DNA from: Mytilus californianus | Taxonomy: Eukaryota | NCBI RefSeq assembly: GCF_021869535.1 | Contig: NW_026262581.1 | Coordinates: 105,462,001 to 105,526,000, forward strand | Reading direction: 5' to 3' | DNA length: 64,000 nucleotides | Part shown: positions 22,599-56,663 of the stretch, piece by piece | How positions within the stretch are numbered: the stretch's first letter is position 1 | How the letters are laid out: each line of letters begins with the position of its first letter | Notes under the pieces: model-generated | What the model was told of the DNA's origin: nothing | Databases searched by the model: none | The model's input: only the letters and a program-made list of their open reading frames with translations | Made by a program: the position numbers and the translations under genes

Positions 22599-25500
22599 TT
22601 AATGTATCAAGTCTTTCAACAAACGAAATGTCCAAACCCAAAAGTCAAAATAACAAAGACGAAATTATCACTGACCTAGATGACGAATCTAAAATTAATG
22701 GAACTAAAGCACATTCATTTCCTGCAAATACAAAAACTTCGAGATCAATAATAAAAGCAACAGACTCATCTTCTCTCAAAAATGGGAATGAAAAATATAA
22801 TGAAAGAAATAGAAAAAAAGAAACAAGTATTCTGACAAGTCCTGACCGCACATTGAAACCTCCGTCGACGACAAAAAAACCACGAAGGCCCGTCAGTGGT
22901 AAAACGACAACAAATGCGAGTAGTACCACAAAAGAAATAAATGGACTCGCTGATGAAGAAGTATCAACAGGTACTCGAACACCTCCTGACCACACTTCAA
23001 GACCTTCGTCGGGGGTAAATAAAACATCAAGGCCCACCAGTGCGAAGACGACATCCACATTAATAGACGATGATGTAAAGACTAGTGGAACAGAAAGTCC
23101 AGTAGTAATGAACAACGAAATAGTATCTAGGAGAACATCAAAATCAAATGAATCGTCAAGACCTTTGAGTGCCAAAGACAACGCAGCAGATCTTCTCCCT
23201 GCAGATGAAAAAGATACATCAAAAACATCTGACACTTTGAATAACATGAATGAGGACCAGACAAAAAATCAATCTGATCTAGGCAAAGAAAATGTGACTG
23301 GGACAACATCGTCGTCGTCTGGTCCACATTCTAGACCTTCTTCAGGAATAGAAGCATCTAAGGTCACCACTGAAATCGAAACCAATGATAAAATACCTGG
23401 AGATTCTCCACCTACAGGAAAATTGTCACCTGTCAATAATGTATCAAGTCCAGTACATAAAGCTAATAAAATATCAAGGACAAGTAGCCCTACCGACACG
23501 AAAATCAGTGACTTAAATGAGGAATTTGAAGTTAAGGAAACTAGAAGACAATCATCTTCTGACAAAATTACAACATCAAGACCAACATCAGGTTCAGGAA
23601 GCGCATCCAGACCAACAAGTGCGATTAAGAACACTAAAGAAATAAATGGACACGTTGATGAAGAAGTATTTACAGGAACTCGAACACCTCCTGACCACAC
23701 ATCAAGACCTTCGTCAGGGATAAATAAAACATCAAGGCCCACAAGTGCAAAGACGACAACCACACAAATAGACAATGATGTAAAGACTAGTGTTACAGAA
23801 GGTCCAATAGTAGTAAACAACGAAAGAGTATCTAGACCAACATCAAAATCAAAGGAATCGTCAAGACCTTCGAGTGCCAAAGACAACGCAGCAGATCTTT
23901 TCCCTGGAGATGAAACAGATACATCAAAAACATCTGACACTTTGAATAACATGAATGAAGATCAGACAAAAGATCAATCTGATCCAGGCAAAGAAAATGT
24001 GACTGGGACAACATCTACGTCGTCTGGTCCACATTCTAGACCTTCTTCAGGAATAGAAGCATCTAAGGTAACCACTGCAATCGAAACCAATGATAAAATA
24101 CCTGGAGATTATTCACCTACAGGAAAATTGTCACCTGTCAATAATGTATCAATTCCAGTACATGAAGCTAATAAAATATCAAGGACAAGCAGCCCTACCG
24201 ACACGAAAATCAGTGACTTAAATGAGGAATTTGAAGTTAAGGAAACTATAAGACAATCATTTTCTGATAAAACTAAAGAAATAAATGGACACGCTGATGA
24301 AGAAGTATTTACAGGTACTCGAACACCTCCTGACCACACATCAAGACCTACGTCCGGGATAAATAAAACATCAAGGCTCACAAGTGCAAAGACGACAACC
24401 ACACAAAAATGCAATGATGTAAAGACTATTGGAACAGAAGGTCCGATAGTCGTAAACAACGAAACAGTATCTAGGCCAACATCAAAATCAAAGGAATCGT
24501 CAAGACCTTCGAGTGCCAAAGACAACGCAGCAGATCCTCTCCCTGCAGATGAAACAGATACATCAAAAACATCTGACACTTTTAATAACATGAATGAAGA
24601 CCAGACAAAAGATCAATCAGATCCAGGCAAAGAAAATGTGACTTGGACAACATCGTCGTCGTCTTGTCCACATTCTAGACCTTCTTCAGAAATAGAAGCA
24701 TCTAAGGTAACCACTGCAATTGAAACCAATGATAAAATATCTGGAGATTCTTCACCTACAGGAAAATTGTCACCTGTCAATAATGAATCAAGTCCAGTAC
24801 ATAAAGCTAATAAAATATCAAGGACAAGTAGCCCTACCGACACGAAAATCAATGACTTAAATGAGAAATTTGAAGTTAAAGAAACTAGAAGACAATCATC
24901 TTCTGACAAAATTACAACATCAAGACCAACATCAGATTCTGGAAGCGCATCCAGACCAACAAGTGCGAGTAAGACCACTAAAGAAATAAATAGACACGCT
25001 GATGAAGAAGCAACTACAGGTACTCGTACACCTCCTGACCACACATCAAGACCTTCGTCAGGGATAAATAAAACATCAAGGCCCACAAGTGCGAAGACGA
25101 CAACCACACAAATAGACAATGATGTAAAGACTAGTGTTACAGAAGGTCCAATAGTACTTAACAACAAAACAGTATCTAGGCCAACTTCAAAATCAAAGGA
25201 ATCGCCAAGACCTTTGAGTGCCAAAGACAACGCAGCAGATCTTCTCCCTGCAGATGAAACAGATACATCAAAAACATCTGACACTTTGAATAACATGAAT
25301 GAGGACCAGACAAAAAATCAATCTGATCTAGGCAAAGAAAATGTGACTGGGACAACATCGTCGTCGTCTGGTCCACATTCTAGACCTTCTTCAGGAATAG
25401 AAGCATCTAAGGTAACCACTGCAATCGAAACCAATGATAAAATACCTGGAGATTCTTCACCTACAGGAAAATTGTCACTTGTCAATAATGTATCAAGTTC

Positions 25501-28500
25501 AGTACATAAAGCTAATAAAATATCAAGGACAAGTAGCCCTACCGACACGAAAATCAGTGACTTAAATGAGGAATTTGAAGTTAAGGAAACTAGAAGACAA
25601 TCATCTTCTGACAAAATTACAACATCAAGACCAACATCAGGTTCAGGAAGCGCATCCAGACCAACAAGTGCGATTAAGAACACTAAAGAAATAAATGGAC
25701 ACGTTGATGAAGAAGTATTTACAGGAACTCGAACACCTCCTGACCACACATCAAGACCTTCGTCAGGGATAAATAAAACATCAAGGCCCACAATTGCAAA
25801 GACGACAACTACACAAATAGACAATGATGTAAAGACTAGTGTTACAGAAGGTCCAATAGTACTAAACAACGAAACAGTATCTAGGCCAACATCAAAATCA
25901 AAAGAATCGTCAAGACCTTCGAGTGCCAAAGACAACGCAGCAGATCTTCTCCCTGCAGATGAAACAGATACATCAAAAACATCTGACACTTTGAATAACA
26001 TAAATGAAGACCAGACAAAAGATCAATCTGATCCAGGCAAAGAAAATGTGACTGGGACAACATCGTCGTCGTCTGGTCCACATTCTAGTCCTTCTTCACG
26101 AATAGAAGCATCTAAGGTAACCACTGCAATCGAAACCAATGATAAAATACCTGGAGATTCTTCACCTACAGGAAAATTGTCACCTGTCAATAATGTATCA
26201 AGTCCAGTACATGAAGCTAATAAAATATCAAGGACAAGTAGCCCTACCGACACGAAAATCAGTGACTTAAATGAGGAATTTGAAGTTAAGGATACTAGAA
26301 GACAATCATCTTCTGACAAAATTACAACATCAAGACCAACATCAGATTCAGGAAGCGCATCCAGACCAACAAGTGCGAGTAAGACCACTAAAGAAATGAA
26401 TGGACACGTTGATGAAGAAGTATTTACAGGTACTCGAACACCTCCTGACCACACATCAAGACCTTTGTCAGGGATAAATAAAACATCAAGGCCCACAAGT
26501 GCAAAGACGACAACCACACAAATAGACAATGATGTAAAGACTAGTGTTACAGAAGGTCCAATAGTAGTAAACAACGAAACAGTATCTAGGCCAACATTAA
26601 AATCAAAGGAATCGTCAAGACCTTCGAGTGCCAAAGACAACGCAGCAGATCTTCTCCCTGCAGATGAAACAGATACATCAAAAACATCTGACACTTTGAA
26701 TAACATGAATGAAGACCAGGCAAAAGATCAATCTGATCCAGGCAAAGAAAATGTGACTAGGACAACATCGTCGTCGTCTGGTGCACATTCTAGACCTTCT
26801 TCAGGAATAGAAGCATCTAAAGTAACCATTGCAATCGAAACAACTGATAAAATACCCGGAGATTCTTCACCTACAGGAAAATTGTTACCTGTCAATAATG
26901 TATCAAGTCCAGTACATGAAGCTAATAAAATATCAAGGACAAGTAGCCCTAGTAACACGAAAATCAGTGACTTAAATGACGAATTTGAAGTTAAGAAAAC
27001 TAGAAGACAATCATCTTCTGACAAAAATAAAACATCAAGACCAACATCAGGCTCAGGAAGCGCAACCAGACCAACAAGTGCGAGTAAGACCATTAAAGAA
27101 ATAAATGGACACGTTGATGAAGTAGTATTTACAGGTACTCGAACACCTCCTAACCACACATCAAGACCTTCGTCAGGGATAAATAAAACATCAAGGCCCA
27201 CAAGTGCAAAGACGACATCCACACAAATAGACAATGATGTAAAGACTAGTGGTACAGAAGGTCCAATAGTAGTAAACAACGAAACAGTATCTAGGCCAAC
27301 ATCAAGATCAAAGGAATCGTCAAGACCTTCGAGTGTCAAAGACAACGCAGTAGATCTTCTCCCTACAGATGAAATAGATACATCAAAAACATCTGACACT
27401 TTGAATAACATGAATGAAGACCAGACAAAAGATCAATCTGATCCAGGGAAAGAAAACGTGACTGGGACAACATCGTCGTCGTCTGGTCCACAATCTAGAC
27501 CTTCTTCAGGAATAGAAGCATCTAAGGTAACTACTGGAATCGAAACCAATGATAAAATACCTGCAGATTCTTCACCTACAGGAAAATTGTCACCTGTCAA
27601 TAATGTATCAAGTCCAGTACATGAAGCTTATAAAATATCAAGGACAAGTAGCCCTACCGACACGAAAATCAGTGACTTAAATGAGGAATTTGAAGTTAAG
27701 GAAACTAGAAGACAATCATCTTCTGACAAAATTACAACATCAAGACCAACATCAGGTTCAGGAAGCGCATCCAGACCAACAAGTGCGATTAAGAACACTA
27801 AAGAAATAAATGGACACGTTGATGAAGAAGTATTTACAGGAACTCGAACACCTCCTGACCACACATCAAGACCTTCGTCAGGGATAAATAAAACATCAAG
27901 GCCCACAAGTGCAAAGACGACAACCACACAAATAGACAATGTTGTAAAGACTAGTGTTACAGAAGGTCCAATAGTACTAAACAACGAAACAGTATCTAGG
28001 CCAACATCAAAATCAAAGGAATCGTCAAGACCTTCGAGTGCCAAAGACAACGCAGCAGATCTTTTCCCTGCAGATGAAACAGATACATCAAAAACATCTG
28101 ACACTTTGAATAACATGAATGAAGACCAGACAAAAGATCAATCTGATCCAGGCAAAGAAAATGTGACTGGGACACCATCTACGTCGTCTGATCCACATTC
28201 TAGACCTTCTTCAGGAATAGAAGCATCTAAGGTAACCACTGCAATCGAAACCAATGATAAAATACCTGGAGATTCTTCACCTACAGGAAAATTGTCACCT
28301 GTCAATAATGTATCAAGTCCAGTACATGAAGCTAATAAAATATCAAGGACAAGTAGCCCTACCGACACGAAAATCAGTGACTTAAATGAGGAATTTGAAG
28401 TTAAGGAAACTATAAGACAATCATCTTCTGACAAAATTAGAACATCAAGACCAACATCAGATTCAGGAAGCGCATCCAGACCAACAAGTGCGATTAAGAA

Positions 28501-31500
28501 CACTAAAGAAATAAATGGACACGCTGATGAAGAAGTATGTACAGGAACTCGAACACCTCCTGACCACACATCAAGACCTTCGTCAGGGATAAATAAAACA
28601 TCAAGGCCCACAAGTGCAAAGACGACAACCACACAAATAGACAATGATGTAAAGACTAGTGTTACAGAAGGTGCAATAGTAGTAAACAACGAAACATTAT
28701 TTAGACCAACATCAAAATCAAAGGAATCGTCAAGACCTTCGAGTGCCAAAGACAACGCAGCAGATATTCTCCCTGCAGATGAAACAGATACATCAAAAAC
28801 ATCTGACACTTTGAATAACATGAATGAAGACCAGACAAAAGATCAATCTGATCCAGGCAAAGAAAATGTGACTGGGACAACATCGTCGTCGTCTGGTCCA
28901 CATTCTAGACCTTCGTCAGGAATAGAAGCATCTAAGGTAACCACTGCAATCGAAACCAATGATAAAATACCTGGAGATTCTTCACCTACAGGAAAATTGT
29001 CACCTGTCAATAATGAATCAAGTCCAGTACATGAAGCTAATAAAATATCAAGGACAAGTAGCCCTACCGACACGAAAATCAGTGACTTAAATGAGGAATT
29101 TGAAGTTAAGGAAACTATAAGACAATCATCTTCTGACAAAATTAGAACATCAAGACCAACATCAGGTTCAGGAAGCGCATCCAGGCCAACAAGTGGAATT
29201 AAGAATACTAAAGAAATAATTCGACACGCTGATGAAGAAGTATTTACAGGAACTCGAACACCTCCTGACCACACATCAAGACCTTCGTCAGGGATAAATA
29301 AAACATCAAGGCCCACAAGTGCAAAGACGACAACCACACAAATAGACCATGATGTAAAGACTAGTGTTACAGAAGGTCCAATAGTAGTAAACAACGAAAC
29401 AGTATCTAGACCAACATCAAAATCAAAGGAATCGTCAAGACCTTCGAGTGTCAAAGACAACGCAGCAGATATTCTCCCTGCAGATGAAACAGATACATCA
29501 AAAACATCTGACACTTTGAATAACATGAATGAAGACCAGACAAAAGATCAATCTGGTCCAGGCAAAGAAAATGTGACTGGGACAACATCTACGTCGTCTG
29601 GTCCACATTCTAGACCTTCTTCAGGAATAGAAGCATCTAAGGTAACCAATGCAATCAAAACTTATGATAAAATACCTGGAGATTCTTCACCTACAGGAAA
29701 ATTGTCACCTGTCAATAATGTATCAAGTCCAGTACATGAAGCTAATAAAATATCAAGGACAAGTAGCCCTACCGACACGAAAATCAGTGACTTAAATGAG
29801 GAATTTCAAGTTAAGGAAACTAGAAGACAATCATCTTCTGACAAAATTACAACATCAAGACCAACATCAGATTCAGGAAGCGCATCCAGACCAACAAGTG
29901 CAAGTAAGACTACTAAAGAAATAAATGGACCCGCAGATGAAGAAGTATTTACAGGTACTCGAACACCTCCTGACCACACATCAAGACCTTCGTCAGGGAT
30001 AAATAAAACATCAAGGCCCACAAGTGCGAAGACGACAACCACACAAATAGACAATGATCTAAAGACTAGTGTTACAGAAGGTCCTATAGTAGAAAACAAC
30101 AAAACAGTATCTAGGCCAACATCAAAATCAAAGGAATCGTCAAGACTTTCGAGTGTCAAAGACAACGCAGCAGATCTTTTCCCTGCAGATGAAACAGATA
30201 CATCAAAAACATCTGACACTTTAAATAACACGAATGAAGACCAGACAAAAGATCAATCTGATCCAGGCAAAGAAAATGTGACTGGGACAACATCGTCGTC
30301 GTCTAGTCCACATTCTAGACCTTCTTCAGGAATAGAAACATCTAAGGTAACCACTGCAATCGAAACCAATGATAAAATACCTGGAGATTCTTCACCTACA
30401 GGAAAATTGTCACCTGTCAATAATGTATCAAGTTCAGTACATGAAGCTAATAAAATATCAAGGACAAGTAGCCCTACCGACACGAAAATCAGTGACTTAA
30501 ATGAGGAATTTGAAGTTAAGGAAACTAGAAGACAATCATCTTCTGACAAAATTAGAACATCAAGACTAACATCAGGTTCAGGTAGTGCATCCAGACCAAC
30601 AAGTGCGATTAAGAACACTAAAGAAATGAATGGACACGCTGATGAAGAAGTATTTACAGGAACTCGAACACCTCCTGACCACACACCAAAACCTTCGTCA
30701 GGGATAAATAAAACATCAAGGCCCACAAGTGCAAAGACGACAACCACACAAATAGACAATGTTGTAAAGACTAGTGTTACAGAAGGTCCAATAGTACTAA
30801 ACAACGAAACAGTATCTAGGCCAACATCAAAATCAAAGGAATCGTCAAGACCTTCGAGTGCCAAATACAACGCAGCAGATCTTCTCCCTGCAGATGAAAC
30901 AGATACATCAAAAACATCTGACACTTTGAATAACATGAATGAAGACCAGACAAAAGATCAATCTGATCCAGGGAAAGAAAATGTGACTGGGACAACATCG
31001 TCGTCGTCTGGTCCACATTCTAGACCTTCTTCAGGAATAGAAGCATCTAAGGTAACCACTGCAATCGAAACCAATGATAAAATACCTGGAGATTCTTCAC
31101 CTACAGGAAAATTGTCACCTGTCATTAATGAATCAAGTCCAGTACATGAAGCTAATAAAATATCAAGGACAAGTAGCCCTACTGACAAGAAAATCAGTGA
31201 CTTAAATGAGGAATTTGAAGTTGAGGAAACTAGAAAACAATCATCTTCTGACAAATTTACAACATCAAGACCAACATCAGGTTCAGGAAGCGCATCCAGA
31301 CCAACAAGTGCGAGTAAGACCATTAAAGTAATAAATGGACACTCTGATGAAGAAGTAATTACAGGTACTCGAACCCCTCCTGGCCACACATCTAGACCTT
31401 CGTCAGGGATAAATAAAACATCAAGGCCCACAAATGCGAAGACGACAACCACACAAATAGACAATGATGTAAAGACTTGTGTTACAGAAGGTCCAATAGT

Positions 31501-34500
31501 ACTAAACAACGAAACACTATCTAGGCCAACATCAAAATCAAAGGAATCGTCAAGACCTTCGAGTGCCAAAGACAACGCAGCAGATCTTTTCCCTGCAGAT
31601 GAAACAGATACATCAAAAACATCTGACACTTTGAATAACATGAATGAAGACCAGACAAAAGATCAATCTGATCCAGGCAAAGAAAATGTGACTGGGACAA
31701 CATCTTCGTCGTCTGGTCCACATTCTAGACCTTCTTCAGGAATAGAAGCATCTAAGGTAACCACTGCAATCGAAACCAATGATAAAATACCTGGAGATTC
31801 TTCACCTACAGGAAAATTGTCACCTGTCAATAATGTATCAAGTCCAGTACATGAAGCTAATAAAATATCAAGGACAAGTAGCCCTACCGACACGAAAATC
31901 AGTGACTTAAATGAGGAATTTGAAGTTAAGGAAACTATAAGACAATCATCTTCTGACAAAATTAGAACATCAAGACCAACATCAGGTTCAGGAAGCGCAT
32001 CCAGACCAACAAGTGCGATTAAGAACACTAAAGAAATAAATGGACACGCTGATGAAGAAGTATTTACAGGAACTCGAACACCTCCTGACCACACATCAAG
32101 ACCTTCGTCAGGGATAAATAAAACATCAAGGCCCACAAGTGCAAAGACGACAACCACACAAATAGACAATGATGTAAAGACTAGTGTTACAGAAGGTGCA
32201 ATAGTAGTAAACAACGAAATATTATCTAGACCAACATCAAAATCAAAGGAATCGTCAAGACCTTCGAGTGCCAAAGACAACGCAGCAGATATTCTCCCTG
32301 CAGATGAAACAGATACATCAAAAACATCTGACACTTTGAATAACATGAATGAAGACCAGACAAAAGATCAATCTGATCCAGGCAAAGAAAATGTGACTGG
32401 GACAACATCGTCGTCGTCTGGTCCACATTCTAGACCTTCGTCAGGAATAGAAGCATCTAAGGTAACCACTGCAATCGAAACCAATGATAAAATAACTGGA
32501 GATTCTTCACCTACAGGAAAATTGTCACCTGTCAATAATGAATCAAGTCCAGTACATGAAGCTAATAAAATATCAAGGACAAGTAGCCCTACTGACAAGA
32601 AAATCAGTGACTTAAATGAGGAATTTGAAGTTGAGGAAACTAGAAAACAATCATCTTCTGACAAATTTACAACATCAAGACCAACATCAGGTTCAGGAAG
32701 CGCATCCAGACCAACAAGTGCGAGTAAGACCATTAAAGTAATAAATGGACACTCTGATGAAGAAGTAATTACAGGTACTCGAACCCCTCCTGGCCACACA
32801 TCTAGACCTTCGTCAGGGATAAATAAAACATCAAGGCCCACAAATGCGAAGACGACAACCACACAAATAGACAATGATGTAAAGACTTGTGTTACAGAAG
32901 GTCCAATAGTACTAAACAACGAAACAGTATCTAGGCCAACATCAAAATCAAAGGAATCGTCAAGACCTTCGAGTGCCAAAGACAACGCAGCAGATCTTCT
33001 CCCTGCAGATGAAACAGATACATCAAAAACATCTGACACTTTGAATAACATGAATGAAGACCAGACAAAAGATCAATCTGATCCAGGGAAAGAAAATGTG
33101 ACTGGGACAACATCGTCGTCGTCTGGTCCACATTCTAGACCTTCTTCAGGAATAGAAGCATCTAAGGTAACCACTGCAATCGAAACCAATGATAAAATAC
33201 CTGGAGATTCTTCACCTACAGGAAAATTGTCACCTGTCATTAATGAATCAAGTCCAGTACATGAAGCTAATAAAATATCAAGGACAAGTAGCCCTACCGA
33301 CACGAAAATCAGTGACTTAAATGAGGAATTTGAAGTTAAGGAAACTATAAGACAATCATCTTCTGACAAAATTAGAACATCAAGACCAACATCAGGTTCA
33401 GGAAGCGCATCCAGACCAACAAGTGCGATTAAGAACACTAAAGAAATAAATGGACACGCTGATGAAGAAGTATTTACAGGAACTCGAACACCTCCTGACC
33501 ACACATCAAGACCTTCGTCAGGGATAAATAAAACATCAAGGCCCACAAGTGCAAAGACGACAACCACACAAATAGACAATGATGTAAAGACTAGTGTTAC
33601 AGAAGGTGCAATAGTAGTAAACAACGAAATATTATCTAGACCAACATCAAAATCAAAGGAATCGTCAAGACCTTCGAGTGCCAAAGACAACGCAGCAGAT
33701 ATTCTCCCTGCAGATGAAACAGATACATCAAAAACATCTGACACTTTGAATAACATGAATGAAGACCAGACAAAAGATCAATCTGATCCAGGCAAAGAAA
33801 ATGTGACTGGGACAACATCGTCGTCGTCTGGTCCACATTCTAGACCTTCGTCAGGAATAGAAGCATCTAAGGTAACCACTGCAATCGAAACCAATGATAA
33901 AATACCTGGAGATTCTTCACCTACAGGAAAATTGTCACCTGTCAATAATGAATCAAGTCCAGTACATGAAGCTAATAAAATATCAAGGACAAGTAGCCCT
34001 ACTGACAAGAAAATCAGTGACTTAAATGAGGAATTTGAAGTTGAGGAAACTAGAAAACAATCATCTTCTGACAAATTTACAACATCAAGACCAACATCAG
34101 GTTCAGGAAGCGCATCCAGACCAACAAGTGCGAGTAAGACCATTAAAGTAATAAATGGACACTCTGATGAAGAAGTAATTACAGGTACTCGAACCCCTCC
34201 TGGCCACACATCTAGACCTTCGTCAGGGATAAATAAAACATCAAGGCCCACAAATGCGAAGACGACAACCACACAAATAGACAATGATGTAAAGACTTGT
34301 GTTACAGAAGGTCCAATAGTACTAAACAACGAAACAGTATCTAGGCCAACATCAAAATCAAAGGAATCGTCAAGACCTTCGAGTGCCAAAGACAACGCAG
34401 CAGATCTTCTCCCTGCAGATGAAACAGATACATCAAAAACATCTGACACTTTGAATAACATGAATGAAGACCAGACAAAAGATCAATCTGATCCAGGGAA

Positions 34501-40500: not shown

Positions 40501-43500
40501 TGGACACGCTGATGAAGAAGTATTTACAGGAACTCGAACACCTCCTGACCACACATCAAGACCTTCGTCAGGGATAAATAAAACATCAAGGCCCACAAGT
40601 GCAAAGACGACATCCACACAAATAGACAATGATGTAAAGACTAGTGTTACAGAAGGTCCAATAGTAGTAAACAACGAAACATTATCTAGACCAACATCAA
40701 AATCAAAGGAATCGTCAAGACCTTCGAGTGCCAAAGACAACGCAGCAGATATTCTCCCTGCAGATGAAACAGATACATCAAAAACATCTGACACTTTGAA
40801 TAACATGAATGAAGACCAGACAAAAGATCAATCTGATCCAGGCAAAGAAAATGTGACTGGGACAACATCGTCGTCGTCTGGTCCACATTCTAGACCTTCT
40901 TCAGGAATAGAAGCATCTAAGGTAACCACTGCAATCGAAACCAATGATAAAATACCAGAAGATTCTTCACCTACAGGAAAATTGTCACCTGTCAATAATG
41001 AATCAAGTCCAGTACATGAAGCTAATAAAATATCAAGGACAAGTAGCCCTACCGACACGAAAATCAGTGACTTAAATGAGGAATTTGAAGTTAAGGAAAC
41101 TAGAAGACAATCATCTTCTGACAAAATTAGAACATCAAGACCAACATCAGGTTCAGGTAGCGCATCCAGACCAACAAGTGCGATTAAGAACACTAAAGAA
41201 ATAAATGGACACGCTGATGAAGAAGTATTTACAGGAACTCGAACACCTCCTGACCACACACCAAGACTTTCGTCAGGGATAAATAAAACATCAAGGCCCA
41301 CAAGTGCAAAGACGACAACCACACAAATAGACAATGATGTAAATACTAGTGTTACAGAAGGTCCAATAGTAGTAAACAAAGAAACAGTATCTAGACCAAC
41401 ATCAAAATCAAAGGAATCGTCAAGACCTTCGAGTGCCAAAGACAACGCAGCAGATCTTTTCCCTGCAGATGAAACAGATACATCAAAAACATCTGACACT
41501 TTGAATAACATGAATGAAGACCAGACAAAAGATCAATCTGATCCAGGCAAAGAAAATGTGACTGGGACAACATCTACGTCGTCTGGTCCACATTCTAGAC
41601 CTTCTTCAGGAATAGAAACATCTAAGGTAACCACTGCAATCGAAACCAATGATAAAATACCTGCAGATTCTTCACCTACAGGAAAATTGTCACTTGTCAA
41701 TAATGTATCAAGTCTAGTACTTGAAGCTAATAAAATATCAAGGACAAGTAGCCCTACCGACACGAAAATCAGTGACTTAAATGAGGAATTTGAAGTTAAG
41801 GAAACTATAAGACAATCATCTTCTGACAAAATTAGAACATCAAGACCAACATCAGGTTCAGGACGCGCATCCAGACCAACAAGTGCGATTAAGAACACTA
41901 AAGAAATAAATGGACACGCTGATGAAGAAGTATTTACAGGAACTCGAACACCTCCTGACCACACATCAAGACCTTCGTCAGGGATAAATAAAACATCAAG
42001 GCCCACAAGTGCAAAGACGACAACCACACAAATAGACAATGATGTAAAGACTAGTGTTACAGAAGGTGCAATAGTAGTAAACAACGAAACATTATCTAGA
42101 CCAACATCAAAATCAAAGGAATCGTCAAGACCTTCGAGTGCCAAAGACAACGCAGCAGATATTCTCCCTGCAGATGAAACAGATACATCAAAAACATCTG
42201 ACACTTTGAATAACATGAATGAAGACCAGACAAAAGATCAATCTGATCCAGGCAAAGAAAATGTGACTGGGACAACATCGTCGTCGTTTGGTCCACATTC
42301 TAGACCTTCGTCAGGAATAGAAGCATCTAAGGTAACCACTGCAATCGAAACCAATGATAAAATACCTGGAGATTCTTCACCTACAGGAAAATTATCACCT
42401 GTCAATAATGAATCAAGTCCAGTACATGAAGCTAATAAAATATCAAGGACAAGTAGCCCTACCGACACGAAAATCAGTGACTTAAATGAGGAATTTGAAG
42501 TTAAGGAAACTAGAAGACAATCATTTTCTGACAAAATTAGAACATCAAGACCAACATCAGGTTCAGGAAGCGCATCCAGGCCAACAAGTGGAATTAAGAA
42601 TACTAAAGAAATAATTGGACACGCTGATGAAGAAGTATTTACAGGAACTCGAACACCTCCTGACCACACATCAAGACCTTCGTCAGGGATAAATAAAACA
42701 TCAAGGCCCACAAGTGCAAAGACGACATCCACACAAATAGACAATGATGTAAAGACTAGTGTTACAGAAGGTCCAATAGTAGTAAACAACGAAACAGTAT
42801 CTAGACCAACATCAAAATCAAAGGAATCGTCAAGACCTTCGAGTGTCAAAGACAACGCAGCAGATATTCTCCCTGCAGATGAAACAGATACATCAAAAAC
42901 ATCTGACACTTTGAATAACATGAATGAAGACCAGACAAAAGATCAATCTGGTCCAGGCAAAGAAAATGTGACTGGGACAACATCTACGTCGTCTGGTCCA
43001 CATTCTAGACCTTCTTCTGGAATAGAAGCATCTAAGGTAACCAATGCAATCGAAACTTATGATAAAATACCTGGAGATTCTTCACCTACAGGAAAATTGT
43101 CACCTGTCAATAATGTATCAAGTCCAGTACATGAAGCTAATAAAATATCAAGGACAAGTAGCCCTACCGACACGAAAATCAGTGACTCAAATGAGGAATT
43201 TCAAGTTAAGGAAACTAGAAGACAATCATCTTCTGACAAAATTACAACATCAAGACCAACATCAGATTCAGGAAGCGCATCCAGACCAACAAGTGCGAGT
43301 AAGACCACTAAAGAAATAATTGGACACGCTGATGAAGAAGTATTTACAGGAACTCGAACACCTCCTGACCACACATCAAGACCTTCGTCAGGGATAAATA
43401 AAACATCAAGGCCCACAAGTGCAAAGACGACATCCACACAAATAGACAATGATGTAAAGACTAGTGTTACAGAAGGTCCAATAGTAGTAAACAACGAAAC

Positions 43501-46500
43501 ATTATCTAGACCAACATCAAAATCAAAGGAATCGTCAAGACCTTCGAGTGCCAAAGACAACGCAGCAGATATTCTCCCTGCAGATGAAACAGATACATCA
43601 AAAACATCTGACACTTTGAATAACATGAATGAAGACCAGACAAAAGATCAATCTGATCCAGGCAAAGAAAATGTGACTGGGACAACATCGTCGTCGTCTG
43701 GTCCACATTCTAGACCTTCTTCAGGAATAGAAGCATCTAAGGTAACCACTGCAATCGAAACCAATGATAAAATACCAGAAGATTCTTCACCTACAGGAAA
43801 ATTGTCACCTGTCAATAATGAATCAAGTCCAGTACATGAAGCTAATAAAATATCAAGGACAAGTAGCCCTATCGACACGAAAATCAGTGACTTAAATGAG
43901 GAATTTGAAGTTAAGGAAACTATAAGACAATCATCTTCTGACAAAATTAGAACATCAAGACCAACATCAGGTTCAGGAAGCGCATCCAGGCCAACAAGTG
44001 GAATTAAGAATACTAAAGAAATAATTGGACACGCTGATGAAGAAGTATTTACAGGAACTCGAACACCTCCTGACCACACATCAAGACCTTCGTCAGGGAT
44101 AAATAAAACATCAAGGCCCACAAGTGCAAAAACGACAACCACACAAATAGACAATGATGTAAAGACTAGTGTTACAGAAGGTCCAATAGTAGTAAACAAC
44201 GAAACAGTATCTAGACCAACATCAAAATCAAAGGAATCGTCAAGACCTTCGAGTGTCAAAGACAACGCAGCAGATATTCTCCCTGCAGATGAAACAGATA
44301 CATCAAAAACATCTGACACTTTGAATAACATGAATGAAGACCAGACAAAAGATCAATCTGATCCAGGCAAAGAAAATGTGACTGGGACAACATCTACGTC
44401 GTTTGGTCCACATTCTAGACCTTCTTCAGGAATAGAAGCATCTAAGGTAACCACTGCAATCGAAACTTATGATAAAATACCTGGAGATTCTTCACCTACA
44501 GGAAAATTGTCACCTGTCAATAATGTATCAAGTCCAGTACATGACGCTAATAAAATATCAAGGACAAGTAGCCCTACCGACACGAAAATCAGTGACTTAA
44601 ATGAGGAATTTGAAGTTAAGGAAACTAAAAGACAATCATCTTCTGAAAAAATTAGAACATCAAGACCAACATCAGGTTCAGGAAGCGCATCCATACCAAC
44701 AAGTGCGATAAAGAACACTGAAGAAATAAATGGACACGCTGATGAAGAAGTATTTACAGGTACTCGAACACCTCCTGACCACACATCAAGACCTTCGTCA
44801 GGGATAAATAAAACATCAAAGCCCACAAGTGCGAAGACGACAACCACACAAATAGATAATGATGTAAAGACTAGTGTTACAGAAGGTCCTATAGTAGAAA
44901 ACAACGAAACAGTATCTAGGCCAACATCAAAATCAAAGGAATCGTCAAGACTTTCGAGTGCCAAAGACAACGCAGCAGATCTTTTCCCTGCAGATGAAAC
45001 AGATACATCAAAAACATCTGACACTTTGAATAACACGAATGAAGACCAGACAAAAGATCAATTTGATCCAAGCAAAGAAAATGTGACTGGGACAACATCT
45101 TCGTCGTCTGGTCCACATTCTAGACCTTCTTCAGGAATAGAAGCATCTAAGGTAACCACTGCAATCGAAACCAATGATAAAATACCTGGAGATTCTTCAC
45201 CTACAGGAAAATTGTCACCTGTCAATAATGTATCAAGTCCAGTACATGAAGCTAATAAAATATCAAGGACAAGTAGCCCTACCGACACGAAAATCAGTGA
45301 CTTAAATGAGGAATTTGAAGTTAAGGAAACTAGAAGACAATCATCTTCTGACAAAATTAGAACATCAAGACCAACATCAGGTTCAGGAAGCGCATCCAGA
45401 CCAACAAGTGCGATTAAGAACACTGAAGAAATAAATGGACACGCTGATGAAGAAGTATTTACAGGAACTCAAACACCTCCTGACCACACATCAAGACCTT
45501 TGTCAGGGATAAATAAAACATCAAGGCCCACAAGTGCAAAGACGACAACCACACAAATAGACAATGATGTAAAGACTAGTGTTACAGAAGGTCCAATAGT
45601 AGTAAACAACGAAACAGTATCTAGACCAACATCAAAATCAAAGGAATCGTCAAGACCTTCGAGTGCCAAAGACAACGCAGCAGATCTTTTCCCTGCAGAT
45701 GAAACAGATACATCAAAAACATCTGACACTTTGAATAACATGAATGAAGACCAGACAAAAGATCAATCTGATCCAGGCAAAGAAAATGTGACTGGGACAA
45801 CATCTACGTCGTCTGGTCCACATTCTAGACCTTCTTCAGGAATAGAAGCATCTAAGGTAACCACTGCAATCGAAACCAATGATAAAATACCTGGAGATTC
45901 TTCACCTACAGGAAAATTGTCACCTGCCAATAATGTATTAAGTCCAGTACATGAAGCTAATAAAATATCAAGGACAAGTAGCCCTACCGACACGAAAATC
46001 AGTGACTTAAATGAGGAATTTGAAGTTAAGGAAACTATAAGACAATCATCTTCTGACAAAATTAGAACATCAAGACCAACATCAGATTCAGGAAGCGCAT
46101 CCAGACCAACAAGCGCGAGTAAGACCACTAAAGAAATAAATGGACCCGCTGATGAAGAAGTATTTACAGGTACTCGAACACCTCCTGACCACACATCAAG
46201 ACCTTCGTCAGGGATAAATAAAACATCAAGGTCCACAAGTGCGAAGACGACAACCACACAAATAGACAATGATGTAAAGACTAGTGTTACAGAAGGTCCT
46301 ATAGTAGAAAACAACAAAACAGTATCTATGCCAACATCAAAATCAAAGGAATCGTCAAGACTTTCGAGTGCCAAAGACAACGCAGCAGATCTTTTCCCTG
46401 CAGATGAAACAGATACATCAAAAACATCTGACACTTTAAATAACACGAATGAAGACCAGACAAAAGATCAATCTGATCCAGGCAAAGAAAATGTGACTGG

Positions 46501-49500
46501 GACAACATCGTCGTCGTCTAGTCCACATTCTAGACCTTCTTCAGGAATAGAAGCATCTAAGGTAACCACTGCAATCGAAACCAATGATAAAATACCTGGA
46601 GATTCTTCACCTACAGGAAAATTGTCACCTGTCAATAATGTATCAAGTCCAGTACATGAAGCTAATAAAATATCAAGGACAAGTAGCCCTACCGACACGA
46701 AAATCAGTGACTTAAATGAGGAATTTGAAGTTAAGGAAACTATAAGACAATCATCTTCTGACAAAATTAGAACATCAAGACCAACATCAGGTTCAGGAAG
46801 AGCATCCAGGCCAACAAGTGCGATTAAGAATACTAAAGAAATAATTGGACACGCTGATGAAGAAGTATTTACAGGAACTCGAACACCTCCTGACCACACA
46901 TCAAGACCTTCGTCAGGGATAAATAAAACATCAAGGCCCACAAGTGCAAAGACGACATCCACACAAATAGACAATGATGTAAAGACTAGTGTTACAGAAG
47001 GTCCAATAGTAGTAAACAACGAAACAGTATCTAGACCAACATCAAAATCAAAGGAATCGTCAAGACCTTCGAGTGCCAAAGACAACGCAGCAGATCTTCT
47101 CCCTGCAGATGAGACAGATACATCAAAAACATCTGACACTTTGAATAACATGAATAAAGACCAGAAAAAAGATGAATCTGATCCAGGCAAAGAAAATGTG
47201 ACTGGGAAAACATCGTCGTCGTCTGGTCCACATTCTAGACCTTCTTCAGGAATAGAAGCATCTAAGGTAACCACTGCAATCGAAACCAATGATAAAATAC
47301 CTGGAGATTCTTCACCTACAGGAAAATTGTCACCTGTCAATAATGTATCAAGTCCAGTACATGAAACTAATAAAATATCAAGGACAAGTAGCCCTACCGA
47401 CACGAAAATCAGTGACTTAAATGAGGAATTTGAAGTTAAGGAAACTAGAAGACAATCATCTTCTGAGAAAATTACAACATCAAGACCAACATCAGATTCA
47501 GGAAACGCATCCAGACCAACAAGTGCGAGTAAGACCACTAAAGAAATAAATGGACCCGCTGATGAAGAAGTATTTACAGGTACTCGAACACCTCCTGACC
47601 ACACATCAAGACCTTTGTCAGGGATAAATAAAAGATCAAGGCCCACAAGTGCAAAGACGACAACCACACAAATAGACAATGATGTAAAGACTAGTGTTAC
47701 AGAAGGTCCAATAGTAGTAAACAACGAAACAGTATCTAGACCAACATCAAAATCAAAGGAATCGTCAAGACCTTCGAGTGCCAAAGACAACGCAGCAGAT
47801 ATTCTCCCTGCAGATGAGACAGATACATCAAAAACATCTGACACTTTGAATAACATGAATGAAGACCAGACAAACGATCAATCTGATCCAGGCAAAGAAA
47901 ATGAGACTGGGACAACATCGTCGTCGTCTGGTCCACATTCTAGACCTTCTTCAGGAATAGAAGCATCTAAGGTAACCACTGCAATCGAAACCAATGATAA
48001 AATACCTGGAGATTCTTCACCTACAGGAAATTTGTCACCTGTCAATAATGTATCAAGTCCAGTACATGAAGCTAATAAAATATCAAGGACAAGTAGCCCT
48101 ACCGACACGAAAATCAGTGACTTCAATGAGGAATTTGAAGTTAAGGAAACTAGAAGACAATCATCTTCTAACAAAATTACAACATCAAGACCAACATCAG
48201 GTTCAGTAAGCGCATCAAGACCAACAAGTGCGAGTAAGACCACTAAAGAAATATATGGACACGCTGATGAAGAAGTATTTACAGGTACTCGAACACCTCC
48301 TGACCACACATCAAGACCTTCGTCAGGGATAAATAAAACATCAAGGCCCACAAGTGCGAAGACGACAACCACACAAATAGACAATGATGTAAAGACTAGT
48401 GTTATAGGAGGTTCAATAGTAGTAAACAACGAAACAGTATCTAGGCCAACAACAAAATCAAAGGAATCGTCAAGACTTTCGAGTGCCAAAGACAACGCAG
48501 CAGATCTTCTCCCTGCAGATGAGACAGATACATCAAAAACATCTGACACTTTGAATAACATGAATGAAGACCAGACAAAAGATCAATCTGATCCAGGCAA
48601 AGAAAATGTGACTGGGACAACATCGTCGTCGTCTGGTCCACATTCTAGACCTTCTACAGGAATAGAAGCGACTGAGGTAACCACTGCAATCGAAACCAAT
48701 GATAAAATACCTGGAGATTCTTCGCCTACAGGAAAATTGTCACCTGTCAATAATGTATCAAGTCCAGTACATGAAGCTAATAAAATATCAAGGACAAGTA
48801 GCCCTACCGACACGAAAATCAGTGACTTAAATGAGGAATTTGAAGTTAAAGAAACTAGAAGACAATCATCTTCTGACAAAATTACAACATCAAGACCAAC
48901 ATCAGGTTCAGGAAGCGCATCAAGACCAACAAGTGCGAGTAAGACCACTAAAGAAATATATGGACACGCTGATGAAGAAGTATTTACAGGTACTCGAACA
49001 CCTCCTGACCACACATCAAGACCTTCGTCAGGGATAAATAAAACATCAAGGCCCACAAGTGCGAAGACGACAACCACACAAATAGACAATGATGTAAAGA
49101 CTAGTGTTATAGAAGGTCCAATAGTAGTAAACAACGAAACAGTATCTAGGCCAACAACAAAATCAAAGGAATCGTCAAGACCTTCGAGTGCCAAAGACAA
49201 CGCAGCAGATATTCTCCCTGCAGATGAAACAGATACATCAAAAACATCTGACACTTTGAATAACATGAATGAAGACCAGACAAAAGATCAATCTGATCCA
49301 GGCAAAGAAAATGTGACTGGGACAACATCGTCGTCGTCTGGTCCACATTCTAGACCTTCTTCAGGAATAGAAGCGACTGAGGTAACCACTGCAATCGAAA
49401 CCAATGATAAAATACCTGGAGATTCTTCACCTACAGGAAATTTGTCACCTGTCAATAATGTATCAAGTCCAGTACATGAAGCTAATAAAATATCAAGGAC

Positions 49501-51007
49501 AAGTAGCCCTACCGACACGAAAATCAGTGACTTAAATGAGGAATTTGAAGTTAAGGAAACTAGAAGACAATCATCTTCTAACAAAATTACAACATCAAGA
49601 CCAACATCAGGTTCAGGAAGCGCATCAAGACCAACAAGTGCGAGTAAGACTACTAAAGAAATATATGGACACGTTGATGAAGAAGTATTTACAGGTACTC
49701 GAACACCTCCTGACCACACATCAAGACCTGCGTCAGGGATAAATAAAACATCAAGGCCCACAAGTGCAAAGACGACAACCACACAAATAGACAATGATGT
49801 AAAGACTAGTGTTACAGAAGGTCCAATAGTAGGAAACAATGAAACAGTATCTAGACCAACATCAAAATCAAAGGAATCGTCAAGACCTTCGAGTGCCAAA
49901 GACAACGCAGCAGATCTTCTCCCTGCAGATGAAACAGATACATCAAAAACATCTGACACTTTGAATAACATGAATGAAGACCAGACAAAAGATCAATCTG
50001 ATCCAGGCAAAGAAAATGTGACTGGGACAACATCGTCGTCGTCTGGTCCACATTCTAGACCTTCTTCAGGAATAGAAGCATCTAAGGTAACCACTGCAAT
50101 CGAAACCAATGATAAAATACCTGGAAATTCTTCACCTACAGGAAAATTGTCAACTGTCAATAATGTATCAAGTCCAGTACATGAAGCTAATAATATATCA
50201 AGGACAAGTAGCCCTACCGACACGAAAATCAGTGACTTAAATGAGGAATTTGAATTTAAGGAAACTAGAAGACAATCATCTTCTGACAAAATTACAACAT
50301 CAAGACCAACATCAGGTTCAGGAAGTGCATCCAGACCAACAAGTGCGAGTAAGACCACTACAGAAATAAATGGACCCGCTGATGAAGAAGTATTTACAGG
50401 TACTCGAACACCTCCTGACCACACATCAAGACCTTCGTCGGGGATAAATAAAACATCAAGGCCAATCAGTGCAAAGACGACAACATCAAAATCAAAGGAA
50501 TCGCCAAGACCATCGAGTGCCAGTAACAGCGCAGCAAATCTTATGTCTGAAGATGAAACAGATACATCAAAAACATCAAAGCAAGTGCATGTAGTTAATA
50601 AAATATCAAGGACAAATAGTCCAGACGACACGAAAACCAGTGACTTCAAGGACAAATTTGAAGTTAAGGAAACTAGAAGACAATCATCTTCTGACAATAT
50701 TACAACATCAAAACGAACTTCAGGTTCAAAAAGCGCATCAACCCCTAAAAGTAGAAGTGAGAACACTAAAGAAATAAATGGACACGCCGATGAAGAATTA
50801 TATACATTAACTGAAACATCTATTGACCAGGTATCAAGACGTCCTCGTCAAGTGAGTAAAACTCAAAGGCCAATTGAAGAAAACAAACAAATGGTTACAG
50901 AGGTAAAAGACAAACCTGAAGATGTAGAAACACGTAGAAGGTCTTCATCATCAGACAATATAAGAACATCAACTGGCACAACTATAATTGGAAATGATGA
51001 GATAGAG
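22599..51007 (+). CDS. Giant coding exon A: Ser/Thr-rich, predicted-disordered tandem-repeat polypeptide (~9,460 codons from ATG 22628); function unknown
   Basis: The frame is stop-free from 22556 to 51019 (track ORF 22586..51022 uses a TTG start). The first in-frame ATG is at 22628, with a possible phase-1 acceptor ttgtcttctttag| at 22598. A donor GAG|GTAAAC follows 51007 on a codon boundary. A short unique N-terminal stretch precedes ~40 copies of a 235-aa unit, about one-third S+T by manual count. Confidence 0.85.
22928..50790 (+). repeat. Coding tandem array, 705-bp unit: 39 units (unit 2 is 66 bp short), a 408-bp deleted unit 40, and a remnant
   Basis: Unit starts (T-K-E-I-N-G register) lie at 22928, 23633 and 24272, then every 705 bp to 50357, with a remnant at 50765. 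The 705-bp periodicity is mirrored in the minus-strand ORF track. Confidence 0.97.
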
Positions 51008-51250
51008 GTAAACACTATATAATTATATTCATCTTCTAGAGTAAAAAATCAAATACTCAAAATTTAGAATTTAATAAGATATTTATCATCGCACTGCAAT
51101 GACCAACATTACAAAATGTAATTGATGTACAATATTACCAAATGTCAAAATTCGTTTCAAAGTTAATCGAATTTATTTTTAAATGTACCGTCTACCGCAC
51201 AGAGCATTATACAGTTACATTGGTGTTAATTTGTTTATTGAAATTATAAA

Positions 51251-51459
51251 GAGAGAAAAGAAACCCAAGGAGCCATAAAAAATCCAATAAAAAAACCCAA
51301 CACTATGGCAAAAAAGAAAAATGACGAAAAGACACGTCACCAACAAAACAATTTACAAAAAAAAATTAAGATTGAGCAGCACATAAGAATCGCATAAAAA
51401 ATCTGGGGTAAACTCAGGTGCTCCGAAAGGGTAAGCACGTCCTACTCCACTAATGCACC
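51251..51459 (+). mobile_element. Family A, degenerate copy in the intron
   Basis: Carries actcaggtgctccgaaagggtaagcacgtcctactccac plus upstream similarity to the other copies. Confidence 0.6.
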
Positions 51460-56310: not shown

Positions 56311-56427
56311 AGGACATTGGACATGTGACTGATGGAAACTTCGTAACATGAGGCATCCATATACAAAGTATGAAGCATCCAGGTCTTCCATCTTCTAAAA
56401 TTTAAAGCTTTTAAGAAGTTAGCTAAC

Positions 56428-56466
56428 GCCGCCGCCGCCGCCGTAGCCGCCGCCGCCGCCGCCGCC
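56428..56466. repeat. (GCC)5-GTA-(GCC)7 microsatellite, part of the HINE
   Basis: Read directly from the sequence. It explains the poly-Ala and poly-Arg short minus-strand ORFs. Confidence 0.95.
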
Positions 56467-56663
56467 GGACCGCTATCCCTATGTCGAGCTTTCTGCGACA
56501 AAAGTTGCAAGCTCGACAAAAATGAAAGAAAACAAATAGAAATAAACATACTCTGCACTGCACAAGAACACCAATTGTCCTTTTTTTATTAATCAATTGA
56601 ATGAAGATTTTCTTTGACAATGTAAATGTTTATTGAAGAAAATATTCATATCATATCTTCCAG

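What the first reader, a model, noticed from the sequence alone, without database searches (positions are those of the whole stretch)
22599..51007. ~28.4-kb uninterrupted coding exon kept open only on the + strand
Seen: there is no stop or frameshift in 28 kb despite many amino-acid-changing variants between units. The near-open antisense frame acts as an internal control, and there several independent variants create stops (ORFs truncated at 24109, 27628, 29806/37561/40381/43201, 44467, 45469). This implies selection for translation of the + frame with loose constraint on residue identity. Established knowledge: the largest well-known human coding exons (TTN, AHNAK, MUC16) are roughly 17-22 kb, so this would be exceptionally large.
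Basis: partly seen in the sequence, partly recalled or inferred. Interest (0 to 1): 0.78.

Follow-up and report, generated by a model that had tools for sequence, protein, structure and literature searches.

The report
Giant 28-kb repeat-coding exon in mussel
The California mussel has one unbroken 28.4-kb protein-coding stretch made of about 40 copies of a 235-amino-acid unit, kept readable by selection although the amino acids themselves drift almost freely; it probably encodes the floppy 1-megadalton front part of a Mytilus-only giant protein that current annotation cuts into two false genes.

Summary
Window 22586-51022 (+) is one open frame of 9,478 codons, built from about 40 tandem 705-bp units (37 full-length, none with an indel).

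- **Selection on the frame.** The 37 units carry 209 distinct variant alleles. About 8.7 should create stops and none does (simulated P = 1e-4). The other five frames gain stops at the expected rate.
- **Loose residue constraint.** dN/dS is about 1 within the array and 0.66-0.78 between species.
- **Replication.** 10.4 kb of the M. galloprovincialis array is fully open, and M. edulis shows 2 stop alleles against 12.4 expected.
- **Gene structure.** The exon ends at a conserved phase-0 donor (51007). It joins a 1,318-codon alpha-helical exon (56664-60620, dN/dS 0.33).
- **Protein.** About 10,778 aa and 1.16 MDa, with no signal peptide or membrane segment. No relative was found outside Mytilus.
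- **Annotation.** RefSeq splits it into "mucin-5AC-like" and "interaptin-like" models. Their array-internal "introns" skip whole repeat units in register, and the one checked base by base has no GT-AG ends.

Caveats:
- The one RNA run laid gave no reads, so expression is not shown.
Coding probably starts at ATG 22628.
- Human mucin repeat exons up to about 69 kb are now reported, so the size is large but not unprecedented.

The parts
22628..51007 (+). Coding part of the giant exon: first in-frame ATG to the splice donor, 28,380 nt = 9,460 codons (about 1.0 MDa, pI 5.8)
   Evidence: The ORF is open. The ATG is conserved in M. coruscus, and the RefSeq model P0004 starts there.
22586..22627 (+). 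The exon's true 5' end is unknown.
   Evidence: The previous in-frame stop is at 22553. The AG reads GG in M. coruscus. No ORF of 107 aa or more lies in 1-22580.
22908..50484 (+). Tandem array of 705-bp (235-aa) units: 37 gapless full units, one unit with an in-frame 66-bp deletion (24062-24700), and partial end units
31046..36685 (+). Block of two-unit (1,410-bp) higher-order repeats. In its core the best match lies two units away, at 99.7-99.9% identity.
   Evidence: Autocorrelation and nearest-neighbour table.
38096..43735 (+). Block of four-unit (2,820-bp) higher-order repeats. The best match lies four units away, at 99.0-100% identity.
50485..51007 (+). Degenerate terminal units (80-88% to the unit). 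This is the unique 3' end of the exon, ending ...NDEIE.
   Evidence: It is present in RefSeq model P0001.
51008..56663 (+). Intron with a GTAAAC donor (phase 0) and a TTCCAG acceptor (phase 0). It holds a high-copy dispersed repeat near 51300-51500 and a 147-bp tandem repeat at 55383-56218.
   Evidence: Sequence. The junction is used in RefSeq models of two species. Donor and acceptor are conserved in M. galloprovincialis. Repeats.
56664..60620 (+). Second large exon: 1,318 codons plus the stop. It is E/K/Q/R-rich and alpha-helical, and ends in a conserved poly-Lys tail followed by LIL.
   Evidence: It is 82% identical to the M. galloprovincialis protein. dN/dS is 0.33 overall and 0.12-0.20 at the C-terminus. 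AlphaFold2 predicts helices of 184, 124 and 145 residues.

Best explanation
**What it is.** The stretch is a real protein-coding exon of a Mytilus-restricted gene.
- Translation most likely starts at ATG 22628 and reads 9,460 codons without interruption through about 40 tandem 235-aa units.
- The units are rich in Ser/Thr/Pro and in charged residues, and carry about 239 SRP[ST]S motifs. They are predicted to be disordered.
- The exon is then spliced (51007 to 56664, phase 0 on both sides) to a 1,318-codon alpha-helical rod exon with a polybasic tail.
- The predicted product is about 10,778 aa and 1.16 MDa, with no signal peptide or membrane segment, so it is probably intracellular.

**How the array evolves.** It changes by in-register unequal crossing-over or gene conversion. 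This produces the two- and four-unit higher-order repeats and leaves the array interior without positional orthology between species.

**What selection does.** It removes only what breaks the frame (stops and frameshifts) and tolerates almost any amino-acid change. Length, composition and the attached conserved C-terminal rod therefore seem to matter, not the exact sequence.

**What is shown.** The frame is open, nonsense and frameshift variants are depleted in three species, the splice sites are conserved and phase-compatible, and the rod exon is under purifying selection.

**What is inferred.** Translation of the whole array in one molecule, the start codon, the intracellular location, and a function as a long flexible spacer or brush anchored by the helical rod.
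For: - **Open frame.** 9,478 codons are open; the other frames carry 54 to 1,191 stops.
- **Nonsense depletion in M. californianus.** There are 209 distinct variant alleles, 8.7 stops expected and 0 seen, simulated P = 1e-4. Counting 297 parsimony steps gives P = 3.5e-6. The 119 singletons alone give P = 0.007.
- **Control frames.** Stop-creating alleles in the five other frames are 17/15.5, 19/11.4, 12/12.4, 20/13.2 and 5/7.7 (observed/expected).
- **Indels.** The 37 full units have none, and the two array length changes worked out (66 bp and 81 bp) are multiples of three.
- **M. galloprovincialis.** In chromosome assembly OZ263145.1 the frame is open over all 3,493 codons held, against 5.3 stops expected.
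- **M. edulis.** 2 stop alleles against 12.4 expected.
- **dN/dS.** About 1 within the array, 0.66-0.78 between species, and 0.33 for the rod exon.
- **Codon usage.** Third-position base composition matches between the two exons.
- **Splicing.** The junction 51007|56664 was predicted from the sequence and is present in XP_052105858.1 and in M. galloprovincialis XP_076077259.1.
- **No hydrophobic segment.** The maximum 19-aa Kyte-Doolittle value is 0.62.
- **Fold predictions.** The unit has pLDDT 48 with no secondary structure. The rod gives three long helices.
- **Array is multi-copy in a second DNA data set.** Array pieces have word depth 740-920 against 36 for the unique exon end.
Against: - **No RNA evidence.** RNA run X21 (about 6% sampled, 10.3 million reads) gave no reads on 45500-51300. 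Its tissue is unknown.
- **No full-length transcript or protein.** No long transcript or peptide evidence was available. No annotated protein of 5,200-16,600 aa matches the array.
- **A shorter isoform exists.** RefSeq isoform X2 in M. galloprovincialis starts inside the rod exon, so the rod may also be made without the array.
- **Weak sequence constraint.** With dN/dS near 1, the array gives no sequence-level proof of a protein function beyond frame maintenance.
- **Assembly uncertainty.** Array length in the assembly could be off in the near-identical higher-order-repeat blocks.
Confidence: 0.72

Rival explanations
1. Two products rather than one. The array ORF is translated as its own protein of about 9,465 aa; unspliced, it stops five codons after the donor, at 51020-51022. 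The helical protein is made separately from a start inside or just before the 56664 exon.
For: RefSeq isoform X2 of M. galloprovincialis starts at the conserved ATG in the rod exon, which corresponds to window 56682. The unspliced reading ends at 51022. The NCBI annotation also treats the region as two genes.
Against: Donor and acceptor are conserved and both are phase 0. The spliced junction is in RefSeq models of two species. A separate array gene would still be a 28-kb coding exon, so this rival changes the product and not the finding.
Confidence: 0.15
2. The current annotation is right. Most array units are intronic, and only a few units are exonic in two short genes (mucin-5AC-like of 1,233 aa and interaptin-like of 2,002 aa).
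For: These are the models XP_052105846.1 and XP_052105858.1 on the same assembly.
Against: The model 'introns' join the same unit position in different units (for example 32018-50347, exactly 26 units). For that one no register gives GT-AG ends. Intronic units would accumulate stops and frameshifts, yet none of the roughly 40 units has one, and even the singleton variants lack stops.
Confidence: 0.08
3. A young non-coding satellite whose consensus happens to lack stops in one frame, open by chance.
For: It has a satellite-like higher-order repeat structure, 96% unit identity and dN/dS near 1. No RNA reads were found in the one run tested.
Against: Conditioning on the variants actually present gives P = 1e-4 or less, and the five control frames behave neutrally. 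The frame, the 705-bp unit length and the absence of frameshifts persist at 12% nucleotide divergence in M. galloprovincialis and M. edulis, while the neighbouring intron is almost unalignable. The array abuts conserved splice sites.
Confidence: 0.03

Closest known systems
Human mucin VNTR exons (MUC12, MUC4, MUC16)
   Same: One very large coding exon made of tandem Ser/Thr/Pro-rich repeats, with an ORF maintained across degenerate units and repeat-driven evolution. Liftover and automatic annotation tend to break such exons into segments (PMC13345508).
   Different: This protein has no signal peptide, no membrane segment and no SEA or von Willebrand-type domains. About 27% of its residues are charged. 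It carries a C-terminal 1,318-aa helical rod. It has no sequence homology to mucins, and the RefSeq name 'mucin-5AC-like' reflects composition only.
Chironomus Balbiani ring genes (BR1, BR2.1, BR2.2, BR6)
   Same: [quoted passage not shown] From my own knowledge, these genes are 35-40 kb with a core repeat exon of comparable or larger size.
   Different: The BR products are secreted silk-like proteins with Cys-containing repeats. There is no homology, and the mussel protein lacks a signal peptide.
Intracellular repeat giants: AHNAK, Ki-67, and neurofilament-H side-arms (from my own knowledge, not tested)
   Same: A long, disordered, possibly phosphorylated repeat region encoded in one big exon and attached to a structured or coiled-coil anchoring part. 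This is a plausible model for how the mussel protein works (flexible spacer or brush).
   Different: There is no sequence similarity. This unit is longer (235 aa) and the array is 5-10 times larger. Domain order and taxonomic range differ. The function here is only inferred.
RefSeq models XP_052105846.1 (mucin-5AC-like) and XP_052105858.1 (interaptin-like), M. californianus
   Same: They cover parts of the same ORF and the same 51007|56664 junction, with identical residues.
   Different: They skip 2,049 bp and 18,330 bp of the open array as in-register 'introns' (the 18,330-bp one has no GT-AG ends in any register) and split one reading frame into two genes. About 20 kb of the open frame is left unannotated as coding.

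Membership tests
Giant tandem-repeat (VNTR-type) coding exon | One uninterrupted reading frame across the whole array | tested here: met
   9,478 open codons. There are no stops, and no indels in the 37 full units.
Giant tandem-repeat (VNTR-type) coding exon | The frame is maintained by selection, shown by depletion of nonsense and frameshift variants relative to neutral expectation | tested here: met
   0 stops against 8.7 expected, P = 1e-4. The control frames behave neutrally. The result is replicated in M. galloprovincialis and M. edulis.
Giant tandem-repeat (VNTR-type) coding exon | The array is transcribed and translated as one exon | tested here: inconclusive
   One RNA run gave no reads. 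The only support is indirect, from RefSeq models that use the exon's end and its donor.
Mucins (secreted or tethered) | Ser/Thr/Pro-rich tandem repeat domain | tested here: met
   Ser 17.7%, Thr 14.8%, Pro 7.4% of 9,478 residues.
Mucins (secreted or tethered) | Entry into the secretory pathway: a signal peptide, and for tethered mucins a membrane segment | tested here: not met
   The N-terminus after ATG 22628 is hydrophilic (mean Kyte-Doolittle -1.46). The maximum 19-aa hydropathy is 0.50 in the array exon and 0.62 in the rod exon. No upstream coding exon is evident.
Mucins (secreted or tethered) | Flanking mucin domains (VWD/C8/TIL/CTCK, or SEA) | tested here: not met
   Pfam scans of the first 705 aa, the last 540 aa and the rod exon gave only a marginal low-complexity DUF7343 hit and a sub-threshold Skp1_POZ hit.
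Interaptin (Dictyostelium actin-binding coiled-coil protein) | N-terminal calponin-homology actin-binding domain and a C-terminal membrane anchor (features recalled from my own knowledge) | tested here: not met
   No Pfam family was found in the rod exon, no hydrophobic segment, and an exhaustive HMMER search found no relative outside Mytilus. Only the long helical character is shared.
Non-coding satellite with higher-order repeats | No reading-frame constraint, so stops and indels accumulate equally in all frames | tested here: not met
   The + frame is free of stops while the five other frames gain them at expected rates. Indels are absent or in-frame. The higher-order repeat structure itself is present.

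The most novel reading that the evidence does not exclude
A genus-restricted 'orphan' protein of about 1.16 MDa, built from two repeat expansions. Its 1-MDa N-terminal region is selected only to remain translatable (for length and composition, not sequence). It would act as a giant intracellular polymer brush or spacer, tethered by a conserved helical rod with a polybasic tail. This would be one of the largest single coding exons and proteins described in molluscs, and a clean natural case of selection on an open frame with dN/dS near 1.
Probability: 0.35. Interest if true: 0.65.

Novelty: new member of a known kind. Interest (0 to 1): 0.5.

Why it matters
- **Annotation.** One frame of 28.4 kb is currently split into two unrelated-looking RefSeq genes with false in-register introns. 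The same locus is fragmented or left unannotated in M. galloprovincialis, M. edulis and M. coruscus. This is a concrete example of how long coding arrays are lost by automatic pipelines.
- **Evolution.** Selection on reading-frame integrity can be separated cleanly from selection on sequence here. dN/dS is about 1, yet nonsense and frameshift variants are absent in three species. That makes the locus useful for studying how disordered repeat proteins evolve.
- **Mussel biology.** A 1.16-MDa, Mytilus-only, apparently intracellular protein is unexplored. Its tissue and role are unknown.
- **Size.** The exon size itself is no longer exceptional, given recent long-read results on human mucins.

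Tried and rejected
- **RNA evidence.** One read-laying run on 45500-51499 gave no RNA reads in X21. X3 ('RNA?') holds a gapless, open 735-nt unit-like contig, but it also carries intron repeats, so it cannot be taken as RNA.
- **Logan contig L003** proved to be genomic, not cDNA.
- **Family and structure searches.** Pfam, the PDB sequence search and an exhaustive HMMER search of the rod exon found nothing outside Mytilus.
- **Giant annotated homologues.** A word search for proteins of 5,200-16,600 aa found none.
- **M. edulis and M. coruscus assemblies** carry 1-bp homopolymer indels. In M. edulis these also break the conserved rod exon. Their frameshifts were therefore not used as evidence, only their substitutions.
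- **Positional orthology** of units between M. californianus and M. coruscus: none in the array interior, where every register gives about 94.8%.
- **The short M. edulis array fragment (L008)** as a neutral control was inconclusive: 1 stop against 4.3 expected, with many indels.
- **Upstream coding exons.** No ORF of 107 aa or more lies in 1-22580, and the flank shows only non-coding-level similarity to M. edulis.
- **Literature.** No paper pairs 'interaptin-like' with Mytilus.
Full report
**1. The observation**

The window has no N. The ORF listing reports a single ORF at 22586..51022 on the + strand, 9,478 aa. Inside that span the other two + frames have 536 and 1,191 stops. The three antisense frames have 702, 54 and 658 stops.

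Autocorrelation gives a 705-bp period, with weaker 1,410- and 2,820-bp periods. BLAST of one unit against the window shows the following:
- 37 full units of exactly 705 bp with no gap (23357, and 24701 to 50080).
- One unit with an in-frame 66-bp deletion (24062-24700).
- Degenerate partial units at both ends.

Mean pairwise unit identity is 96.2%, with a minimum of 92.5%. The array region has about 39% G+C and a strong A-over-T skew. The flanks are about 28-33% G+C with little skew.

**2. Is the open frame more than chance?**

Using the most conservative event count, each distinct non-consensus base at each column counted once, the 37 units carry 209 variant alleles: 159 nonsynonymous, 50 synonymous and 0 nonsense.

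| Test | Expected stops | Observed | P |
|---|---|---|---|
| Observed mutation spectrum on the consensus (4.1% of changes make a stop) | 8.7 | 0 | 1.4e-4 |
| Simulation, 20,000 runs, keeping the 12 substitution classes | 8.6 | 0 | 1e-4 |
| 297 Fitch steps on a maximum-likelihood tree | 12.3 | 0 | 3.5e-6 |
| 119 singletons, the youngest variants | 4.9 | 0 | 0.007 |

As an internal control, the same alleles create stops in the other five frames at about the expected rate:

| Control frame | 1 | 2 | 3 | 4 | 5 |
|---|---|---|---|---|---|
| Stop-creating alleles observed | 17 | 19 | 12 | 20 | 5 |
| Expected | 15.5 | 11.4 | 12.4 | 13.2 | 7.7 |

That frame does, however, carry one consensus stop per unit, in 36 units.

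The two array length changes worked out are multiples of three (66 bp and 81 bp), and the frame stays open across the remaining 3'-end rearrangement.

The nonsynonymous:synonymous ratio is 3.18 observed against 3.26 expected. Variants are spread evenly over codon positions (64/80/65). Within the array, residue identity is therefore effectively unconstrained.

**3. Identity of the locus and current annotation**

The window is Mytilus californianus, assembly GCA_021869535.1, record JAKFGE010000001.1. That assembly was built from PacBio HiFi reads plus Omni-C (my recollection of PMC9710001; the paper was listed but not opened).

Two RefSeq models lie on the ORF.
- **XP_052105846.1, 'mucin-5AC-like', 1,233 aa.** It uses 22628-24109 and 26159-28321, then a frame-shifted tail ending at 28497.
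- **XP_052105858.1, 'interaptin-like', 2,002 aa.** It starts at a variant ATG at 30626 and reads to 32017. It then skips exactly 26 units (18,330 bp) to 50348-51007 and continues with 56664-60620.

The array-internal 'introns' join the same unit position in different units. For the 18,330-bp one, no register within the alignment ambiguity gives GT-AG ends. I read them as artefacts of aligning collapsed evidence onto a repeat. No annotated protein of 5,200-16,600 aa resembles the array.

**4. Exon boundaries and the rest of the gene**

*3' end.* The frame meets GAG|GTAAAC after 51007, at phase 0. The next long open frame begins at TTCCAG|GAG at 56664, also phase 0, and runs to the stop at 60618-60620. 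I derived this junction from the sequence before seeing that XP_052105858.1 contains exactly it (...NDEIE|ELNNFTM...). M. galloprovincialis XP_076077259.1 uses the homologous junction, and both splice sites are conserved there.

The ATG at 22628 and its surroundings are identical there. An in-frame stop lies at 22553. In M. edulis a stop followed by Met codons sits at the array's 5' edge. No ORF of 107 aa or more lies in 1-22580. I therefore place the coding start at 22628 and leave the exon's 5' end open.

**5. Comparative evidence**

*M. galloprovincialis.* The chromosome assembly OZ263145.1 (locus L006) holds 10.4 kb of array upstream of the donor. The frame is open over all 3,493 codons held and runs off the locus. 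The other frames have 30-455 stops. Its length variants (9-nt gaps in two units and a roughly 291-nt shorter unit) leave the frame open. About 5.3 stop alleles were expected among 114 alleles.

*M. edulis.* The loci L004 and L005, merged, hold about 26 units of 705 bp. The assembly has 1-bp homopolymer indels that also break the conserved second exon, so frameshifts there are uninformative. Of 267 substitution alleles only 2 are nonsense, against 12.4 expected.

*M. coruscus.* L007 holds at least 14.5 kb of array, 96-97% identical to the M. californianus consensus, again with noisy indels.

*Between species.*
- Consensus units differ by 12% in nucleotides between M. californianus and the M. 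edulis group, with no indel and no stop. dN/dS is 0.66-0.78.
- The second exon has dN/dS 0.33, falling to 0.12-0.20 in its C-terminal third.
- The intron is almost unalignable, with only 128 nt aligning at 77%.
- Units are more alike within a species (95-96%) than between the two lineages (83-88%). The array interior has no positional orthology between M. californianus and M. coruscus. Both observations fit concerted evolution.

**6. The protein**

| Part | Length | Mass | pI |
|---|---|---|---|
| Array exon, from ATG 22628 | 9,460 aa | about 1,003 kDa | 5.8 |
| Second exon | 1,318 aa | 158 kDa | 6.6 |

Together they come to about 10,778 aa.

The array ORF (9,478 residues) is 17.7% Ser, 14.8% Thr and 7.4% Pro, with about 27% charged residues. 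From ATG 22628 to the donor it has about 239 SRP[ST]S motifs and 371 R-x-x-S/T sites. AlphaFold2 on one unit gives pLDDT 48 and no secondary structure. This was a single-sequence prediction, so it is weak evidence for disorder.

A 500-aa piece of the second exon folds as three helices of 184, 124 and 145 residues at pLDDT 74-87.

Neither exon has a hydrophobic segment. The maximum 19-aa Kyte-Doolittle value is 0.62, and the N-terminus is hydrophilic. The protein is therefore probably not secreted, and 'mucin-like' describes its composition only.

Homology searches found no relative outside Mytilus:
- Pfam gives nothing credible.
- The PDB sequence search gives nothing.
- An exhaustive HMMER search of 1.84 billion representatives with the second exon returns only the Mytilus cluster itself.

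Third-codon-position composition is nearly the same in both exons.

**7. Expression**

This is the weak point. The look-up of sequencing runs offered one definite RNA run of the species, X21. Laid on 45500-51499, with about 6% of the run read, it gave no reads on the array or on the unique exon end. Its only four reads fell on a dispersed repeat in the intron. The tissue is unknown, so this shows only absence in that sample.

In DNA run X15 the array pieces have word depth 740-920, against 36 for the unique exon end. The array is therefore multi-copy in a second DNA data set; whether X15 is an independent individual is not known.

Run X3 is of uncertain type. It holds a gapless 735-nt unit-like contig whose 24 listed differences leave the frame open.

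Indirect support comes from the RefSeq models of two species, which include the end of the array exon and its donor.

**8. Mechanism**

*Shown.* The frame is kept open by purifying selection against nonsense and frameshift changes, while amino-acid replacements are nearly neutral. The array turns over by in-register recombination, which produces the higher-order repeats. The downstream rod exon is conserved.

*Inferred.* The whole array is translated into a very long flexible polyampholyte, possibly multiply phosphorylated. It is attached to a helical rod with a polybasic tail that could mediate oligomerisation or anchoring. A truncating mutation anywhere would lose the rod, which would explain frame maintenance without sequence constraint.

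The nearest functional analogies are intracellular repeat giants (AHNAK, Ki-67, neurofilament side-arms). These come from memory and were not tested.

**9. Comparison with what is known, and novelty**

Giant tandem-repeat coding exons are a known kind.
- A 2026 pangenome preprint states that all human mucins have a large VNTR exon. It reports MUC12 alleles up to 23,080 aa and MUC4 repeat alleles up to 27.8 kb, and notes that liftover fragments such exons (PMC13345508).
- Balbiani ring genes have repeat-built central coding regions (PMC4192438).

What is new here is the particular gene. It is a Mytilus-restricted, apparently intracellular protein of about 1.16 MDa that is missing from current annotation as a single entity, with an unusually clean signature of selection on the frame only.

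- The spliced two-exon protein was never joined for a search or a fold. Each exon was handled by reference.
I confirmed them.

Noticed in passing
window 55383-56218: A 147-bp tandem repeat (5.3 copies, 84% matches; also scored as a 440-bp period) lies inside the intron between the array exon and the helical exon.
   Followed up: no
window about 51300-51500: A high-copy dispersed repeat: DNA run X15 has word depth of about 13,000 there against about 36 for single-copy sequence. The only RNA reads of X21 on the stretch fall here.
   Followed up: no
L008 17345-20713 (M. edulis CAJPWZ010001218.1, about 200 kb from the main array): A second, short (4.6 units) copy of the array with 35 indel events and no helical exon beside it. 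It is either a decayed partial duplicate or an uncollapsed haplotig. As a neutral control it was inconclusive (1 stop allele against 4.3 expected).
   Followed up: partly
L004/L005 (M. edulis) and L007 (M. coruscus): Both older long-read assemblies carry frequent 1-bp homopolymer indels. In M. edulis these also break the conserved helical exon. Their gene models at this locus are strings of fragments (for example 453, 841, 370, 2,791, 441 and 994 aa).
   Followed up: partly
window 60540-60620: The protein ends in a conserved polybasic tail (Lys run followed by LIL; LIIL in M. galloprovincialis). It could be a nuclear-localisation or polyanion-binding signal.
   Followed up: no
L006 13580 (M. 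galloprovincialis), equivalent to window 56682: RefSeq isoform X2 (XP_076077268.1, 1,291 aa) starts at a conserved ATG six codons into the helical exon. This hints at an alternative promoter in the intron and at a rod-only product.
   Followed up: partly
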